Assembly: GCA_965649765.1 (NCBI GenBank)
Contig: OZ287748.1
Location: 99,014,001 to 99,078,000, forward strand
Length of the DNA: 64,000 bases
Reading direction: 5' to 3'
Source: Bispira polyomma
Taxonomy: Eukaryota
Each line of letters begins with the position of its first letter. Position 1 is the first letter of the stretch. A program made the position numbers and the translations under genes. Below are positions 40,398 to 53,262 of this stretch, one piece after another. The notes below the pieces were generated by a model, which saw nothing but the letters and a program-made list of their open reading frames with translations, was not told where the DNA came from and did not search any database.

Positions 40398-41739
40398 CTA
40401 GTTGTGGTGGGTGAAAAGATTGATTGTGATTGAAAGAAAACATCAGCATTTACCACATACACCTAATTTTTGTCAAACTATGAATCTTGGAATATTGTAG
40501 TTTCTAATATTAAGTCTTATATTTAAACAGAAACAATTTGCATACACAGCCTTGTTTTGAAGTCAGTTTTGGGTGAAGATCCTTTTCAGAGAACTGACAA
40601 CAAAACAAAAATATTAAAATTGGATTTAAAAACGATTGTTTATATTTTTGGGGTTCGCCTTATAATATGCAGTAAAATATGTCGGCAATATTATTAGGCA
40701 TTTTGAAAATGCCATTTGTAAATTTCCTGTTTAATTACTAATATTATTTAAGGTTATTGCAGATGAGTGAAAATATAAGACGCTTACATTATGACTATAG
40801 CTAGGTGGTTAATATTTTCGAATTTTTATATTGTTGTGATCAAGTTTCCATGTGTTGCTTTTGTATGCGCATATGCATAGCAAACTAGTATGCAATGAAT
40901 GGCCGCTCCATTCTGATCTTGTTTAAAGACCTTTATCCTAAAAAAACCTCATATAAAAAATAATGTTTCATTCAAGTTTTTTTTAGGAGAATCACACAAT
41001 GCTACTTAGGATCCTAATTATTTGTATAAATTAGTGTTAGTGTCCAAAGCAGCTGACTAAGCGCCCAAATCGAACACTCATTTCATGTTATGAAATAAAT
41101 AGTTAAACATTAAACATATGTTTTGATCATAAACTTTTATATACCTTCAAAATAGATTCCGCTACCCGGCTGGGTAGGCATATGTACAGTCACTCAATGC
41201 AGACCATTACACATAGGTCAGCAGCCAGCCAAGTTTGTCCCAGGGAAGATGTTACAGTCTGTAACAGTAGTTAGGGTGATATGCTCAGGGTGGGTGAATA
41301 AGAGGAAGGACCTTTCCTTTACTAGAAACAGGCCACACAGTCCCAAATATCGACATATTCATTAAATTCAAACTATTTTTCACGGGAGGTGGGTTGGGCT
41401 AAATTTACCACTGTTAACTTGCTGCTTTTGGAAACAATAATGCCTACATACTAGAAAAGAGGGGAACTCAGCCAGATATTTTTTGAGGTATGGATAGACA
41501 TCAGTAGAGATCCCAGGATGAAACATGACTTGACAAAGATAGTTTTGAATAGGCTGCAGCTTTTATATGTGGGATTGTTTTGCGCCAAGCAGGAAGGAAT
41601 TGCACTAGTCCAGACGGCTGAAGACCAACCACTCGTGTACTCTGAAAGGCAGGTTGACTGAGGATAAAACAGGATCATCCAGATTGATTTTTGGGGTTCT
41701 GAGAGTCCGATAGGATCTGATCCAATCAAGGACAGTGCA

Positions 41740-41845
41740 ATTTAGTCGAAACCATTGTTATAAGGTGTAGATCATGGTCTATGGTATTAAAAGCTGCCGA
41801 AAGATCTAGAAGGGTGAGGGCTACAGTTTCATCATCATCCAAGGT
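41740..41845 (-). mobile_element. L2 RT micro-fragment
   Basis: ALTLLDLSAAFNTIDHD. Confidence 0.7.
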
Positions 41846-42569
41846 TAATGTCATTACATTATACAATTATATTTCTTATACAATGAATTATTTTGCAACC
41901 AATACCAAAACCAAAATTGTACATTCAGTTATACCCACTACATTTATATACTTAGACTTTATCACTTTAGACTGTATAACCTGTAACTACTTAATACATA
42001 CATTGTCACATTTACAAGCACAAACTTTATACACCATGAACCTGTATTACAATCTCAAGCCATACCTCGTCACATAATAAACTGTACCGTACATCAGCTG
42101 CAATGAACTATACACCCAAAAACAGAATTCTATTTTATACGCTATGACAGTGTAATGTAACCTCAGGCTATTAATTGCGACATGACTGAACACGATTGTG
42201 ACCACTTGATTTTATGTGTTTCTTTGTGTAATTTAATTACCAAGAGCAGTTATCAAAGAGAGCTCAAAATGTTTTTTTTATTGCTGTGACGTCACAAACA
42301 TGAAATGTCATTAACCACACCAATTATCACTATAATATATCGCTATACCAACAGCTCAGAACTTTGACAGCAGTTTAGTTCATCCTCTGTTAGAAACACA
42401 CAGACGTGACCTATCCCTTTTTATCAAAACTTTGGGGAAGATTGGTATGCAATATATTCAGAAACTCACTTTGTTTTTATTCAATTAAAAGACAAATATT
42501 TTGTAATCAGATTTATACTCAGCATATATCTACCTTCATCTGGTATTTAGAGTGATAATTAACTGACTG

Positions 42570-48209: not shown

Positions 48210-48413
48210 CTAGTTATCTCTATCCTTCTGTAGATTTGGGGGAAGATTCGCTGAGATTGTATTTTCAACATCATTTACCTCCAACTGTGATGTTAGTTTA
48301 GCTTCCATTGCATTACAAACCATTTGTGGTGCTTGGCTTGCTAGAACGGTTTTTACTATTTCAGTTGATTTCAGTTTCACCTCTTTTTCGATGATGCTTT
48401 TCAAATCATCGTG
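48210..48413 (-). CDS. Exon 2 (terminal) of caspase-like gene, helical/coiled-coil tail
   Basis: Acceptor TTTTACTTTTAG; phase 0, in frame with the donor at 49115 (LNK|HDDLKSIIEKEV...DRDN*). Confidence 0.7.
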   Translation of the reverse strand, partial: HDDLKSIIEKEVKLKSTEIVKTVLASQAPQMVCNAMEAKLTSQLEVNDVENTISANLPPNLQKDRDN

Positions 48414-49114
48414 CTAAAAGTAAAATAACAGGGTTGGTATTACAATACAAAAGTTAAAGGTATTACTTAGTAATTGCATAAATGCCAACATTATTTTAAC
48501 ATTAGCTATTGTTAATATTAATATTGATCAATTGCTTTGTTAATTCGATAAATCGATATACTAATATTTATTGATCGATGTAATAACTGAACAAATAGAA
48601 AAACAACACTTTAGTTTGCCTTAGTCTACAACTATCTATAACTGTTTCACTGCTTTTTAGCTGAGAGTTCATTGTCATGTGACGGAAATCACAACATCAA
48701 AGTATTTTTCACTCACTGACGGATGTTTAAATACTGAATAATTACCAATAAATCAAAATATTAAATATATATGTGTATCCGTACAGATTAGATGAATGTA
48801 AAAAATAACTGGGCCAATTCATATGTAATGTCTACTACAGAACATAAGTGCCAAGTAACAAAATTGCAAAGCTTGTATAAAAAGTCGATCAGTATTTTTG
48901 TGACATTTACAGTGCATACATATTATCTGTTGACCTTGGATGACCAGAGTAACGCATCTCGGCTAATGGCTCCAATAATAATTTTTATGTTTAAAGTTAT
49001 CACAAATATTGAGTTACCTTAATACTGTGCTAATTTACAAAGATTTTACAGATTGAACTACTTATTATTTCAAAATTACCTCTAAAACATGTAGGTGTTG
49101 TTCATGGTACTCAC

Positions 49115-50847
49115 CTTGTTCAATTTGGCCAGAAATAGTTGCTTTGTCAAAGTACTCGTGAATATTGGCAGTTGATAGTCATTTCCATTCACTCCCCATA
49201 CACCAGCAGATTGAATTAATTGGCCAGTGTGATGCAACATATCATTCATATAAACAAAAGCTTTTCCTTTTAAGGTTTTTGAATCAACATCCACCATGTT
49301 GCCTCGATATTTTACTCGTACAACTACTTCCATTTGGTTCACTTTACAATCCCTTAAAATCGGATCAGCCTCCCATGTATTGCCTACAATCTTGATCCTT
49401 CCCTGTTTTGTCTCTACATTTTGATAATCTAGCCTCAGTTGGCCAGATATTTCAAAGTGCTTAGTATCCCCAAAAGCTTTCAAACTTTCTGCAGGCACCC
49501 ACTCCTCACACACCGTCTTCATTCCCTGGTTCTGCAGCCATATAATCTCCCCTTTAAACTGGTATGGACTTAGTGTAAGGTCTTCAGCCTGTGCAAATCC
49601 AGTGTAGGTATTCCCAGAAACAAAGACTGGTCTGTATTTAGGTTGGTCATCCATTACTGTCGAACTTTGAGGCTTAACTTGCCCAAAACTGTTACAGGAC
49701 AAAGTTCCTCTTCCCAAGGAACTTTGATGACACAATTTGTACTGTTACAGGCAAAGAACTTCTTTATAGTGTTGTTACAAGTCAAGGCAGTCGATTCTGT
49801 CAACATCTCAAAGATATCTTTTTGTTCACTGTGCTTTCTCATAATACCAACTAAATTTTTTAAGAACCAAGACCCTTGTTTATTTGATACATAGCTTTGT
49901 TTTGTGTGCATTGTTGCATAGGCAACCAAGATATCTTTTCTGGTAATGGATGGCAACAATGTTGGTTTGTTGTCTTCATTATCGGATTGTGGACTTAAAT
50001 CAACACGTACAGCAGCTGCATGTGTGTCGTCGGCACCTCGACATGCTTGAAAAAAAAAGCATTTTGGAACATTTTTTAATGAGGCCACATTATTATGTGT
50101 AAAGGTGTTTATTATCTCTTCTTGAGTTATCACACAAACCTCATTGTTACACATTTCATCCTCTTGTCCATCCGTCCCTTGCTGACACATAATGATTCCT
50201 TTGTCAGTCCCATGGCTCAGTACAAACATGATGAATTTGTCATACTTTCTGTTTTCCTTTAAAAAGAGTTGAATATTTGATAGAGCTTTCCTGAACTGTT
50301 GACTGCTCAAATTTCTAAATGTTGACCCAAATAAATCTGTCTTCACATCAAAATTAAACATGTCACTTTTAAAGAGGTTTTCAAGCGACTCTATATCTTC
50401 CTTGTAGCCTAATAAAACCCGATTTTCGTCTCCCAATACTAATTCCTCAGGGATGAAGTTAGCCATAATAATACAAATACCCTTTCCTCCAGTAGGGTAT
50501 CTACTGGAATCCACATTACCAGAGGGGCTGCTCTCCTGTGTACCCAAATGAGGGAAGCCATGTGTATGTTGGCTGTCATATCTACTATTTTCTGGTGCCG
50601 GGGCAGAGATGTTCGTTGTAGTCTCACTGGTATAACGTATGTTATCCTGGCTACTTATTCTGTTGCCCTGTGTAGGGGAGTCATGTTGTGTATGTTTACC
50701 GTCGTCTTTACTCCCATTTTCTGGTGCCAGCGCAGAGGTGCTTGGGGTAGTCGCACTGGTATTAGGTTTGTTATCTCGGCTACTTGATTTGTTGCCCTGT
50801 TGTTCCAACTTATTGGACTTCCCAAAGCATGAGAGAAGTCGAGACAT
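49115..50847 (-). CDS. Caspase-like cysteine protease (C14A fold), main exon, with frameshifted C-terminal extension
   Basis: KGICIIMAN, FIMFVLSHG (50209-50217), PKCFFFQACRG (50035-50049), DILVAYAT, GSWF; second frame 49735-49115 ends at canonical donor AAG|GTGAGT. Confidence 0.9.
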
Positions 50848-50964
50848 GTTATTGGCAATCCAATAACTGTAAATCAGAACAATATTCTTCTTATTGTGTT
50901 ATTCTTTTAAATCGACAAATTTCTTTATCATGCCTTCTCACCAGAGTCTTGTTGCTAATAAATT

Positions 50965-51115
50965 AACACACACATACACACACCCACACACACTTTCGAA
51001 ACCAAAAGTACTAAAATACGGTATTTGGTTGACTTTCGAGTGTTGTAATCGGATCTTATCCAATCAGAAATAGGCTTTAATAACTTAGATAAATACAAAA
51101 CCTTAATTGGCTGAA
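50965..51115 (-). promoter_or_regulatory. Candidate upstream regulatory region of the caspase gene (CA repeat, CCAAT boxes)
   Basis: (CA)n at ~50967-50993; CCAATCAG ~51060 and ATTGGCTG ~51106; motif match only. Confidence 0.25.
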
Positions 51116-51352
51116 CACGCCAGTGGTATTTGGTTCGTGCATCAGTATGGTTTGTGTATGTACACGATGAATTTATGAATCAGTTTTTACTGTGTAAATA
51201 TATGAACTTTTGCTTTTAAAATGGGTTCTTATACGTTTTTTTCTGAAAAGATAGTTATCACGAAAGATTTAGTTTCATTGTGTCTATTGTGTATTGTATC
51301 CAGCCTACTAATAAAAATGTTCTTTTGATTTGCATTATATAAAACTGAATAC

Positions 51353-53219
51353 TACGGAAGAGTATAAGGGCCACCTTTTTTTTTTTTTTTTTTTTTTTTT
51401 TGAATTGTCGAGATAGTATCTCGATTAATCGAGATAATTTAGATGAAATTTTTTTTTATTTTTGAATTGTCGAGATAATATCTTGATAAATCGAGATAAT
51501 TTAGAAACAATTTTTTTTTTTTTGAATTGTCGAGATAATATCTCGATAATTCGAGATAATTAAAAGGAATTTTCTTTTAATTGTCACCATATTAATTATC
51601 CACCATGGAGAAGGAAGGTGTGTGATTGGCCAACTGAACAGCCAACATGGAAAAGGACACAAACAGTCATCGGGTCAAAGTTAATCAGCAGTCACAGAGA
51701 TCAAAAGTAGTTAATTAGCATATAGTCATGGGGTCAAAAGTAGTTAATCAGGGCAAGACACAAACCGTCATAGATGTCAAAAGTAGTTAATTAGGGCTAG
51801 ACACAAACAGTCATAGAGGTCAAAAGTAGTTAATCAGCAAACAGTCATAGGGTCAAAAGTAGTTAATCAGGGCAAGATATAAACAGTCAGAGTTAGAGTC
51901 AAAAGTAGGTAATCAGGCTTTTAACAAAAGTCAATTTCAACAAAATTGGTCAGTATTTATCCTTTTATCTACTAATTACAATTTTAGGTGACCAAGAAGT
52001 TAGGGCCATTTTAACATAATTAGGTTAACCATGAGTATAGATAACACAGTGACTTTGAGGTCACCTTACTAAACTATAGAGAATTACCATTTTAAATTAC
52101 CAAGGGTGACTTAAAGTCAACATAATGTGAATGACTTTAAGGTTAACATTAACTATAATAACCATGCTTTTAAGGTTAACTTTAATTAGGAAAAGTAGAA
52201 TGACTTAATGTCATCTACCCATTATAGCATACTACTAGTAAAGAAGAGACTTAAGCTCATCTTACATTCAGTTTAAGTTACTTAAATCTTTACTAGTAAC
52301 TCAGCAGTTTTAGTTAACGCAACCTTAAAGGCTACCTTTTAAAATAAACTGCCATTTATATTTAAGGGATTACTTGTAGTATGTTACAAATGCGTTATAT
52401 ACATAATTTACTAAAATGCCCAATCGCTATGCTATCAACTATTGTACATTGTAAAATAAAATATATTATACCAAAAAAAGAGAAAATCTTCTTAATTATC
52501 TCGATTTATCAAGATATTATCTCGACAATTCAAAAAAAAAAATAGGTAATACTGACCAATTTTGTTAAAATTGACTTTTGTTGAAAGCCTGATTAACTAC
52601 TTTTGACCCTATGAGTGTTTGCTGATTAACTACTTTTGACCTCTATGACCGTTTGTGTCTGGCCCTAATGAACTACTTTTGACCTCTATGACTGTTTGTG
52701 TCTAGCCCTAATTAACTACTTTTGACATCTATGACTGTTTGTTTCTTGCCCTAATTAACTACTTTTGACCCCAAGACTGTTTGCTGATTAACTACCTTTT
52801 GATCTCTATGACTGTTTGCTGATTAACTTTTGACCCGATGACTGTTTGTGTCCTTCTGCATGTTGGCTGTTCAGTTGGCCACTCACACACCTTCCTTCTC
52901 CATGGTGGATAATTATTTCAATTTATCGAGATAGTATCTCGACAATTCAAAAAAAAAAAAACAATTCTTATTATCTTGATTTATCGAGATATTATCCCAA
53001 CAATTCAAAAAAAATATATATATTTTTTTTCAATTATCTCGATTTATCGAGATATTATCTCGACAATTCAAAAAAAAAATTCTGATTATTTTGATTTTTT
53101 GGAGATATTATCTAGACAATTCAGAAAAAAAAATATTTTTTCCTTATTATCTCGATTTATCAAGATATTATCTCGAGAATTCAAAAAAAAAAAAAAGTTG
53201 GCCCTTTCACTCTTTCATA
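51353..53219. mobile_element. Foldback-like DNA transposon with ~600-700 bp modular inverted arms
   Basis: Tips TACGGAAGAGTATAAGGGCC / GGCCCTTTCACTCTTTCATA; ~60-bp palindromic TCGAGATAATATCTCGA units; 51594-51960 is the reverse complement of 52547-52913; GTCAAAAGTAGTTAAT subrepeats. Confidence 0.9.
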
Positions 53220-53262
53220 CTGTCTGATATTCCACTGAAATTCATAATTTACTCAAGGATAA

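What the first reader, a model, noticed from the sequence alone, without database searches (positions are those of the whole stretch)
48210..49735. Unknown beta-rich domain downstream of the caspase, reachable only by a frameshift
Seen: the caspase frame stops at 49654. An overlapping frame (49735-49115, 207 codons, no stops) runs to a canonical GTGAGT donor and splices in phase 0 to a 67-aa terminal exon. It contains two 26-aa segments with G/G/W in identical register (ISGQLRLDYQNVETKQGRIKIVGNTW and LKGKAFVYMNDMLHHTGQLIQSAGVW). Established: animal caspases usually end soon after the p10 subunit. Inference: the ancestral protein is a caspase fused to a C-terminal domain I do not recognise, and the frame break near 49735-49750 is an assembly error, a recent disabling mutation or a recoding site. 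Together with the altered S1 pocket, this is the best candidate for an undescribed protease-effector or sensor module in the window.
Basis: partly seen in the sequence, partly recalled or inferred. Interest (0 to 1): 0.75.

Follow-up and report, generated by a model that had tools for sequence, protein, structure and literature searches.

The report
Caspase with orphan domain in loop
The "unknown domain after the caspase" is a folded 190-residue domain of no known family, inserted inside the caspase's substrate-binding loop in a small invertebrate gene family, and the copy in this window carries a real frame-breaking change and is probably a young pseudogene.

Summary
The caspase frame stops at 49654, a second frame is open over 49735-49115, and a GTGAGT donor and a phase-0 67-codon exon follow.

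The reading is partly right. The second frame ends in the caspase's own last strand (YQLPIFTSTLTKQLFL). The beta-rich domain is therefore an insertion of about 190 residues in loop L4, not a C-terminal add-on.

Six other loci in this genome carry caspase, insert and last strand in one open frame. A profile of the insert found 11 proteins among 1.84 billion representatives. All are caspase-embedded or fragments.

The insert matches nothing in Pfam, PDB sequences, Foldseek, VIA or BFVD. The model has pLDDT 82 and the best Z is 3.9.

The frame break lies at 49640-49677. It is about 20 nt longer than the nearest paralog and is identical in contigs of three DNA runs, so it is not an assembly error.

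The window copy and both its closest relatives are damaged, so a young pseudogene is most likely. No RNA data exist. The scan's index lists no note on the paralog loci.

The parts
49654..50847 (-). Frame A. It holds an N-terminal Ser/Thr/Pro-rich stretch of about 130 aa, then the caspase catalytic domain (SHG, QACRG) through helix 5, then the first ~26 residues of the insert (FFACNSTNCVIKV...CPVTVLGK). It runs on into non-homologous LSLKVRQ and the stop TAA at 49656-49654.
   Evidence: PF00656 E 1.4e-27, profile 16-208/233. (alignment A1). (family profile vs caspase-3, E 1e-27).
49178..49755 (-). The inserted orphan beta-rich domain in loop L4. The part 49755-49678 is read in frame A and the part 49639-49178 in frame B.
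   Evidence: about 195 profile positions lie between caspase-3 residues 252 and 261. AlphaFold2 model of the paralog's insert, pLDDT 81.9; no known family or fold.
49640..49677 (-). Frame-break zone inside the variable linker of the insert. It is 38 nt where the nearest paralog has 18. The alignment places the extra ~20 nt at about 49645-49664. Frame B is the -1 frame relative to frame A.
   Evidence: alignment A3.; contigs of X1, X2 and X3 span 49127-50956 with 0 other letters and 0 gaps.
49115..49177 (-). The caspase's last beta strand and a short tail (YQLPIFTSTLTKQLFLAKLNK), read in frame B.
   Evidence: profile 459-473 (QlpvisStLtkklyl) aligns to caspase-3 261-275 (QIPCI.SMLTKELYF), colinear with the main match..
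48414..49114 (-). Putative 701-nt phase-0 intron, GTGAGT...TTTTAG.
   Evidence: donor-like xAG|GT 5-16 codons after STLTK in all 6 family loci whose nucleotides were printed; the acceptor is conserved in the paralog. No transcript evidence.
48210..48413 (-). Putative terminal exon, 67 codons plus stop (HDDLKSIIEKE...DVENTISANLPPNLQKDRDN*).
   Evidence: the L002 paralog has the same acceptor and a 57-codon open frame in the same phase (HEHANEIIEKE...FDVDDVERTN*); a third, decayed copy keeps ...DDVENTISANLPKNPQREENN* after three stops.

Best explanation
The window holds one member of a small, lineage-restricted subfamily of caspase-3-like cysteine proteases.

**Architecture (shown).** In this subfamily an orphan, mostly beta domain of about 190 residues is inserted into loop L4. 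That is the loop between helix 5 and the last strand which, in known caspases, forms one wall of the substrate groove (a recalled point). The catalytic His (SHG) and Cys (QACRG) are kept. Both arginines that bind the substrate's aspartate in ordinary caspases are replaced. After the insert come the normal last strand, a phase-0 intron and a short terminal exon.

**The window's copy (shown, then inferred).** An indel of a length not divisible by three, about 20 nt relative to the nearest paralog, lies in the variable linker inside the insert. It throws the rest of the insert, the last strand and the tail into the -1 frame. A ribosome reading frame A stops at 49654 without the last strand, which lies at the dimer interface in known caspases (a recalled point). 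I infer that this copy is a recently inactivated pseudogene, in a sub-clade whose two other copies are also damaged.

**Intact relatives (inferred, not shown).** The inserted domain most likely acts as a built-in recognition module beside the non-prime side of the active-site groove. It could bind substrate or ligand, or act as a lid, on a protease that no longer cleaves after Asp.
For: **Architecture.**
- The family profile A6 (13 full-length members) hits caspase-3 at E 1e-27 in two colinear stretches. Profile 11-263 aligns to residues 36-252, and profile 459-473 aligns to residues 261-275.
- Caspase-3 R64 aligns to Leu and R207 to Val. SHG or GHG and QACRG are present in 13 of 13 members.

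**Uninterrupted relatives.**
- L003, L004, L005, L006 and L007 carry everything in one open frame of 485-582 aa. L002 has one of 426 aa.
- The window's copy is the only one of the 7 loci with a full insert that is split into two frames.
- The profile search found 11 proteins at E<=0.001 among 1.84 billion representatives. Seven are caspases of 480-541 aa with the insert at about residues 255-500. Four are fragments. The 8 that were scanned with Pfam show only PF00656.
- These proteins are 35-64% identical to this genome's paralogs, in ortholog-like pairs.
- In three such pairs the insert is 49-55% identical, against 61-64% for the core.

**Fold.** The model has pLDDT 81.9 and pTM 0.67.

**Frame break.**
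- The linker is 38 nt here and 18 nt in L002.
- Contigs from 3 runs (2 samples, 1 study) with even depth across the intron agree exactly.

**Decay of the sub-clade.**
- L002 lacks the first 167 codons.
- L010 ends after SHG and has 3 stops in its tail exon.
- Between the window and L002, dN/dS is 0.56 in the core and 1.05 in the insert.

**Recency.** Under neutral drift at d=0.15, frame B would stay open with P about 0.03 and frame A with P about 0.002.
Against: - No RNA run was found for this organism. Expression, the 701-nt intron and the absence of a frame-restoring splice are therefore untested.
- Both frames are free of stops over 397 and 207 codons. This fits a very young pseudogene, but it fits a gene that is still used equally well.
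- A 47-nt GTTAAG...TACAG segment (49678-49632) would restore the frame if it were spliced out (my reading).
- The three runs may come from the animal that was assembled, and contigs drop rare variants. A polymorphic or heterozygous break cannot be excluded.
- The dN/dS of 1.05 in the insert could reflect diversifying selection rather than decay (a single pair only).
- The position of the insert relative to the groove rests on alignment to caspase-3 and on recalled caspase structure. I made no model of a full-length member.
- No function of the insert was tested.
Confidence: 0.68

Rival explanations
1. The gene is functional. The frame is restored in the mRNA by a tiny intron (for example the 47-nt GTTAAG...TACAG at 49678-49632) or during translation by a -1 ribosomal frameshift at U UUG GGC (49689-49681), giving a full-length insert-bearing caspase.
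For: - Frame B is exactly the -1 frame.
- Both frames are long and free of stops. This is unlikely under long neutral decay.
- A GT...AG segment of 47 nt (2 mod 3) lies at the right place.
Against: - The 47-nt segment has a weak donor (GTTAAG). Its removal would delete the KYR residues shared with L002.
- The only other intron inferred here is 701 nt.
- The heptamer is not of the canonical kind; that Y is normally A or U is recalled knowledge.
- The 100 nt downstream fold no better than shuffles: z +0.43, with 126 of 200 shuffles at least as stable.
- The site differs in L002, which needs no shift.
- The two closest relatives are plainly broken.
Confidence: 0.12
2. One reading: a complete caspase is followed by a separate C-terminal effector or sensor domain, and the break is an assembly error.
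For: - The domain is real, conserved and always fused to a caspase.
- Pfam's match ends before it.
Against: - The caspase is not complete before the domain. Its last strand follows the domain, and Pfam's match stops at profile position 208 of 233 in the window's frame A.
- Contigs of three DNA runs reproduce the break with 0 differences.
Confidence: 0.04
3. The second frame belongs to a separate gene or a transposable-element fragment that merely overlaps the caspase's end.
For: None beyond the change of frame.
Against: - Only 7-8 loci in a 1.04-Gb genome match, and every one lies inside a caspase gene.
- All database relatives are caspase-embedded or fragments.
- The frame ends in the caspase's own last strand.
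Confidence: 0.01
4. The break is real but polymorphic or heterozygous. An intact allele exists in the population and the locus is a functional gene with a segregating null allele.
For: Stop-free frames imply that the break is young.
Against: No variant was seen in three runs from two samples. However, contigs drop minor alleles and there is one study only.
Confidence: 0.15

Closest known systems
Effector caspases (caspase-3/-7; MEROPS C14A, Pfam PF00656)
   Same: - They are the best solved relatives, with caspase-3 at E 1e-27.
- The order of elements is the same.
- SHG and QACRG are kept in 13 of 13 members.
- The last strand has the same motif, Q.P...S.LTK.LY.
- There is no long pro-domain in most paralogs.
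   Different: - About 195 positions replace caspase-3 residues 253-260 in loop L4.
- Both Asp-binding arginines are replaced, R64 by Leu and R207 by Val.
- A putative extra terminal exon is present.
Paracaspase MALT1 and metacaspases (C14B)
   Same: They have a caspase fold with a His-Cys dyad, a specificity that is not for Asp, and extra folded or long segments attached to the catalytic domain. These properties are recalled, not tested here.
   Different: - As I recall, their extra parts lie after the domain (the Ig3 domain of MALT1) or between p20 and p10 (type II metacaspases), not in L4.
- As I recall, their S1 pocket is acidic. Here the aligned positions are Leu and Val.
- In sequence the family is nearest to caspase-3, -7 and -8.
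Annelid and other lophotrochozoan caspases with unusual pro-domains (PMC11463336)
   Same: These are lineage-specific domain gains on caspases in invertebrates. I saw passages only.
   Different: - The passages I read describe N-terminal pro-domains (Z-binding, kinase, TIR, ROC, ankyrin).
- The words 'insertion' and 'additional domain' occur 0 times in the main text.
- Its supplementary tables were not available to me.
[quoted passage not shown]
   Same: A lineage-specific long insertion in an effector-type caspase, with a regulatory role. I saw only the start of the abstract in a search listing.
   Different: That insertion is the linker between the large and small subunits, according to the abstract. 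It is not a folded domain in L4.

Membership tests
Caspase (Peptidase_C14, PF00656 / C14A) | Significant sequence match to the family profile | tested here: met
   - Window frame A matches at E 1.4e-27.
- 8 of 8 database relatives match at E 1e-22 to 1e-33.
- The family profile matches caspase-3 at E 1e-27.
Caspase (Peptidase_C14, PF00656 / C14A) | Catalytic His (SHG) and Cys (QACRG) | tested here: met
   The window has LSHG and QACRG. They are present in 13 of 13 full-length members.
Caspase (Peptidase_C14, PF00656 / C14A) | Asp-binding arginine pair of the S1 pocket (caspase-3 R64 and R207; numbering taken from the alignment) | tested here: not met
   The profile aligns Leu to R64 and Val to R207. 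The ..V....GS motif is present family-wide; the pattern caught the right motif in 12 of 13 members, and P0007 was read instead.
Caspase (Peptidase_C14, PF00656 / C14A) | Last beta strand directly after helix 5 and a short L4 loop, in one reading frame | tested here: not met
   The strand is present but displaced by about 195 positions in the family. In the window it lies in the -1 frame.
Caspase (Peptidase_C14, PF00656 / C14A) | Cleavage after Asp; activation by inter-subunit cleavage | not testable with these tools
   This needs enzyme assays.
Intact protein-coding gene (window copy) | One uninterrupted frame through all conserved elements | tested here: not met
   Frame A stops at 49654 and the remaining elements lie in frame B. 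The break is reproduced in 3 of 3 runs.
Programmed -1 ribosomal frameshift site | Canonical slippery heptamer plus a stable downstream structure, conserved in relatives | tested here: not met
   - The only candidate is U UUG GGC, which is non-canonical by recalled rules.
- The downstream 100 nt give z +0.43.
- The paralogs need no shift.
Any described protein domain family (for the insert) | Sequence or fold match | tested here: not met
   - Pfam: no match for the window's frame-B piece (E<=1). Apart from PF00656, the only match in 8 relatives was a sub-threshold Fer4_ETF_QO hit in one of them (E 0.079, 13.6 bits against a cut-off of 24) (E<=0.1).
- PDB profile search: only caspases among the 60 rows shown of 234 matches, and in the two alignments printed the match lies outside the insert.
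- Foldseek on PDB: 0 hits at E<=0.001, best TMq 0.18 among the rows shown.
- VIA wide search: best Z 3.9 of 48,161 chains.
- BFVD: 0 hits at E<=0.001.
- ESM Atlas: no usable hit.
- No library of predicted cellular structures was available.
Transposable-element fragment | Many dispersed copies independent of host genes | tested here: not met
   There are 7-8 loci and all lie within caspase genes.

The most novel reading that the evidence does not exclude
The intact members of this family are active caspase-fold proteases that have given up aspartate specificity. They carry, in the L4 specificity loop, an orphan folded domain of a fold not seen in solved structures. That domain would serve as a built-in substrate- or ligand-recognition module (an exosite, a sensor or a lid). 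This would be a new architectural class of caspase, evolving quickly in one invertebrate lineage, possibly in defence. The window's copy would be a recent casualty of that turnover, or would still be used through a tiny intron.
Probability: 0.3. Interest if true: 0.8.

Novelty: new variant of a known kind. Interest (0 to 1): 0.6.

Why it matters
In caspases, loop L4 shapes substrate choice, and the two S1 arginines define cleavage after Asp (recalled knowledge).

This family keeps the catalytic dyad in 13 of 13 members, has lost both arginines, and has grown a folded orphan domain exactly in L4. It would be a natural experiment in re-aiming a caspase. It could also reveal a new fold and a new mode of substrate or ligand recognition in invertebrate cell-death or defence pathways.

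For annotation, it shows that an apparent 'caspase plus unknown ORF' can be one gene whose last strand lies beyond a large insertion. It also shows that this particular locus should be flagged as frame-broken, not corrected.

Tried and rejected
**Searches that found nothing**
- Pfam on the frame-B piece and on the terminal exon gave nothing at E<=1.
- The first AlphaFold2 model, from 6 sequences, was poor (pLDDT 65.3). Its Foldseek search gave nothing. I replaced it with an 18-sequence model.
- Foldseek on PDB, the VIA wide search, BFVD and the ESM Atlas gave no convincing relative. The weak VIA rows (KOW/SH3-like, PilZ, FN3, ERH; Z<=3.9) are below the tool's own noise level, so I do not use them.
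- The word-indexed protein search found only 1 hit of 259 candidates for the insert and 1 hit of 698 candidates for the caspase part.
- No RNA run was found, so the splice and the break could not be tested in transcripts.

**Ideas tested and rejected**
- Internal repeat: rejected. The shuffle control in that script failed to parse.
- Assembly error: rejected.
- Programmed frameshift: no support.
- TE or separate gene: rejected.

**Partial or corrected results**
- The genome search with the terminal exon alone missed the L002 counterpart. I found it later by tblastx and DNA alignment.
- tblastx among the downstream regions of the other paralogs showed only matches in all frames and on both strands, which are DNA-level repeats. 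No shared terminal exon stood out.

**Literature**
- Five searches and passages of PMC11463336 turned up no caspase with a domain in L4 or p10. The other papers were seen only as listings with the start of their abstracts.
- Supplements are closed. The caspase tables of PMC11463336 could hold members of this family.

**Not attempted**
- I did not determine the organism.
Every search, alignment, fold and dN/dS estimate used the pieces separately or used intact paralogs.
Full report
**What is in the sequence**

On the minus strand an ORF of 397 codons (50847-49654) matches the caspase family: PF00656, E 1.4e-27. The match ends at profile position 208 of 233, so the end of the domain is missing.

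A second frame is open from 49735 to 49115, while the other two frames are full of stops there. It runs into AAG|GTGAGT at 49115/49114. A TTTTAG acceptor at 48414 opens a 67-codon exon in phase 0 that ends at 48210.

**The domain is an insertion, not an appendage**

The second frame ends in YQLPIFTSTLTKQLFLAKLNK. A search of the window's own genome with the frame-B protein found seven further loci.
- In L003, L004, L005, L006 and L007 one open frame of 485-582 aa holds the caspase, the unknown domain and this terminal motif. L002 has one of 426 aa (alignment A1).
- A profile of 13 full-length family members hit caspase-3 in the PDB at E 1e-27, in two colinear pieces. Profile 11-263 aligns to caspase-3 36-252. 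Profile 459-473 (QlpvisStLtkklyl) aligns to caspase-3 261-275 (QIPCI.SMLTKELYF).
- The second piece is weak on its own (conditional E about 1e-3), but it is colinear and was found in both alignments shown.

So about 195 positions replace caspase-3 residues 253-260. From recalled caspase structure, that is loop L4, between helix 5 and the last strand. It forms one wall of the S4 side of the substrate groove, and the last strand lies at the dimer interface.

The same alignment puts Leu opposite caspase-3 R64 and Val opposite R207. Both Asp-binding arginines are therefore lost family-wide, while SHG or GHG and QACRG are kept in 13 of 13 members. This agrees with an earlier first-reader note on the same ORF.

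**How widespread, and is the domain known?**

- A profile of the insert alone (A2, 6 rows) was scored against 1.84 billion representative proteins. It gave 11 hits at E<=0.001, of which 8 were at E<=1e-10.
- Seven hits are proteins of 480-541 aa with the insert at about residues 255-500. Four are fragments of 100-319 aa.
- The 8 scanned with Pfam show only PF00656, apart from one sub-threshold hit at E 0.079 in one of them.
- All come from unnamed ENA contigs. They are 35-64% identical to this genome's paralogs, in ortholog-like pairs: P0013/L004 at 60%, P0002/L003 at 54%, P0003/L007 at 57%. The family therefore diversified before at least one speciation.
- In those three pairs the insert is 49-55% identical, against 61-64% for the core. 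It is thus constrained in the intact lineages.
- Within this genome the profile finds 7 loci with a full insert. L008 has an in-frame loss of the insert's middle. It keeps the first hairpin and the last ~45 residues.

AlphaFold2 on L002's insert with 18 aligned sequences gave pLDDT 81.9 and pTM 0.67. The model is mostly strands with two short helices. The searches with this model and the insert found the following.
- Foldseek on PDB: 0 hits at E<=0.001, best TMq 0.18 among the rows shown.
- VIA wide search: best Z 3.9 of 48,161 chains, below the tool's stated background.
- BFVD: 0 hits at E<=0.001.
- ESM Atlas: no usable hit.

No library of predicted cellular structures was available, so 'new fold' is not shown. 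What is shown is that nothing matches among solved structures. The proposed 26-aa internal repeat is not supported.

**The frame break**

- Frame-A homology to the paralogs runs through CPVTVLGK, to about 49678. Frame-B homology starts at KYRPVF, at 49639.
- The 38 nt between these points correspond to 18 nt in L002. The alignment places about 20 extra nt at roughly 49645-49664. This linker varies in length across the family, so the exact event cannot be pinned down.
- Contigs of three public runs (two samples, one study) have even depth across the intron and hence look like DNA. They cover 49127-50956 with 0 other letters and 0 gaps. This rules out an assembler or long-read artefact. It does not rule out a minor allele, and the samples may include the assembled animal.
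- No RNA run was found.
- A -1 frameshift has no support. The only heptamer, U UUG GGC, is non-canonical by recalled rules, and the 100 nt downstream fold no better than shuffles (z +0.43).
- A 47-nt GTTAAG...TACAG segment would restore the frame if it were spliced out. It has a weak donor and would remove residues shared with L002. I give frame restoration by any route about 0.12.

**Pseudogene or not**

The window's two closest relatives are both broken.
- L002 is 58-61% identical. It lacks the first 167 codons, through a deletion equivalent to window 50328-53220.
- L010 lies 43 kb away on the same chromosome. It keeps only the N-terminal half, ending just after SHG, plus a tail-exon remnant with three TAG stops.

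Between the window and L002, dN/dS is 0.56 in the core (dS 0.38) and 1.05 in the insert (dS 0.29). This is a single pair, so relaxed selection and diversifying selection cannot be separated.

A simple neutral simulation shows that the open frames would rarely survive the whole divergence. At d=0.15, P is about 0.03 for frame B and about 0.002 for frame A. The break must therefore be young relative to the duplication.

My reading is a recently disabled copy in a decaying sub-clade of an otherwise intact family.

**The terminal exon**

- In all 6 family loci whose nucleotides I printed, a donor-like xAG|GT lies 5-16 codons after STLTK. The seventh region, downstream of L003, was missed by my pattern.
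- L002 has a 4.5-kb larger gap. After it comes the same polypyrimidine-CAG acceptor and a 57-codon open frame in the same phase, sharing H..(x)5IIEKE and DV(D/N)DVE(N/R)T with the window.
- L010 keeps the last ~25 residues.

Transcripts are still needed. No shared terminal exon was recognisable among the more distant paralogs.

**How it probably works (inference)**

In intact members the catalytic machinery is conserved and the S1 pocket is no longer basic. A constrained folded domain sits at the tip of L4, next to the non-prime side of the groove. The most economical guess is a built-in recognition module (an exosite, a ligand sensor or a lid) on a protease with a specificity other than Asp. 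None of this was tested.

**Comparison and novelty**

By homology the family belongs to the caspases, nearest to caspase-3, -7 and -8. It fails the Asp-pocket criterion, and L4 is expanded by a domain.
- Known analogies place their extra parts elsewhere. These are the Ig3 domain of MALT1, the metacaspase linkers (both recalled), the unusual pro-domains of annelid caspases (PMC11463336, passages) and the long inter-subunit linker in molluscs (PMC11543851, start of abstract in a listing).
- Five full-text searches found no description of a domain inserted in L4 or p10. Supplements were closed.
- I rate it a new variant of a known kind, with interest 0.6. The family is noteworthy. The window's copy itself is most likely a young pseudogene.

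All searches used the pieces apart or used intact paralogs.

Noticed in passing
L008 1471-2511 (-) = G000:C10 about 48.54 Mb: This paralog has an in-frame loss of the middle of the insert. It keeps the first hairpin (FFPVNKANVKVEVFHDNKW) and the last ~45 residues before YQLP. It lies between L003 and L004 in what looks like a tandem cluster on C10 (48.45-48.59 Mb).
   Followed up: partly
L010 2066-2611 (-) and 1480-1680 (-) = G000:C1:99104216-99107359, 43 kb beyond the gene and outside the window: A third copy of the window's sub-clade. Its 181-aa ORF is 55% identical to residues 29-217 of the window's caspase and ends just after SHG. About 400 nt further on lies a remnant of the terminal exon with three TAG stops.
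   Followed up: partly
L002 232-843, L025 and L018 (G000:C7 about 14.737-14.744 Mb): The nearest paralog has lost the equivalent of window 50328-53220, which includes the start codon and 167 codons. In its place are about 610 nt holding a short tandem repeat (TTAGGTAACCCTAAC-like units). It also carries about 4.5 kb of extra sequence between the main exon and the terminal exon.
   Followed up: partly
window 50460-50847 (-): The N-terminal ~130 residues are Ser/Thr/Pro/Asn-rich, with a repeated T.TT.(x)S/A.APEN(G/S) motif. The intact paralogs L004, L005 and L007 lack this extension. L010 shares it.
   Followed up: no
window 49113-49168: Contigs of all three runs break here. A 44-base piece there has higher depth, and run X3 has an alternative 81-base piece with 2 differences. 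This fits words shared with the L002 paralog, whose sequence is nearly identical around LFLAKLNK|GT.
   Followed up: no
L005 and L006 (G000:C6 27.72 and 27.80 Mb, opposite strands): Two near-identical intact family members lie about 83 kb apart in inverted orientation. Their C-terminal tails are identical.
   Followed up: no
window 41500-41870 (about 7.3-7.7 kb downstream of the gene), L019 and L022: Stretches downstream of the window gene, L003 and L007 match each other in all frames on both strands. They look like a shared dispersed repeat, not an exon.
   Followed up: no
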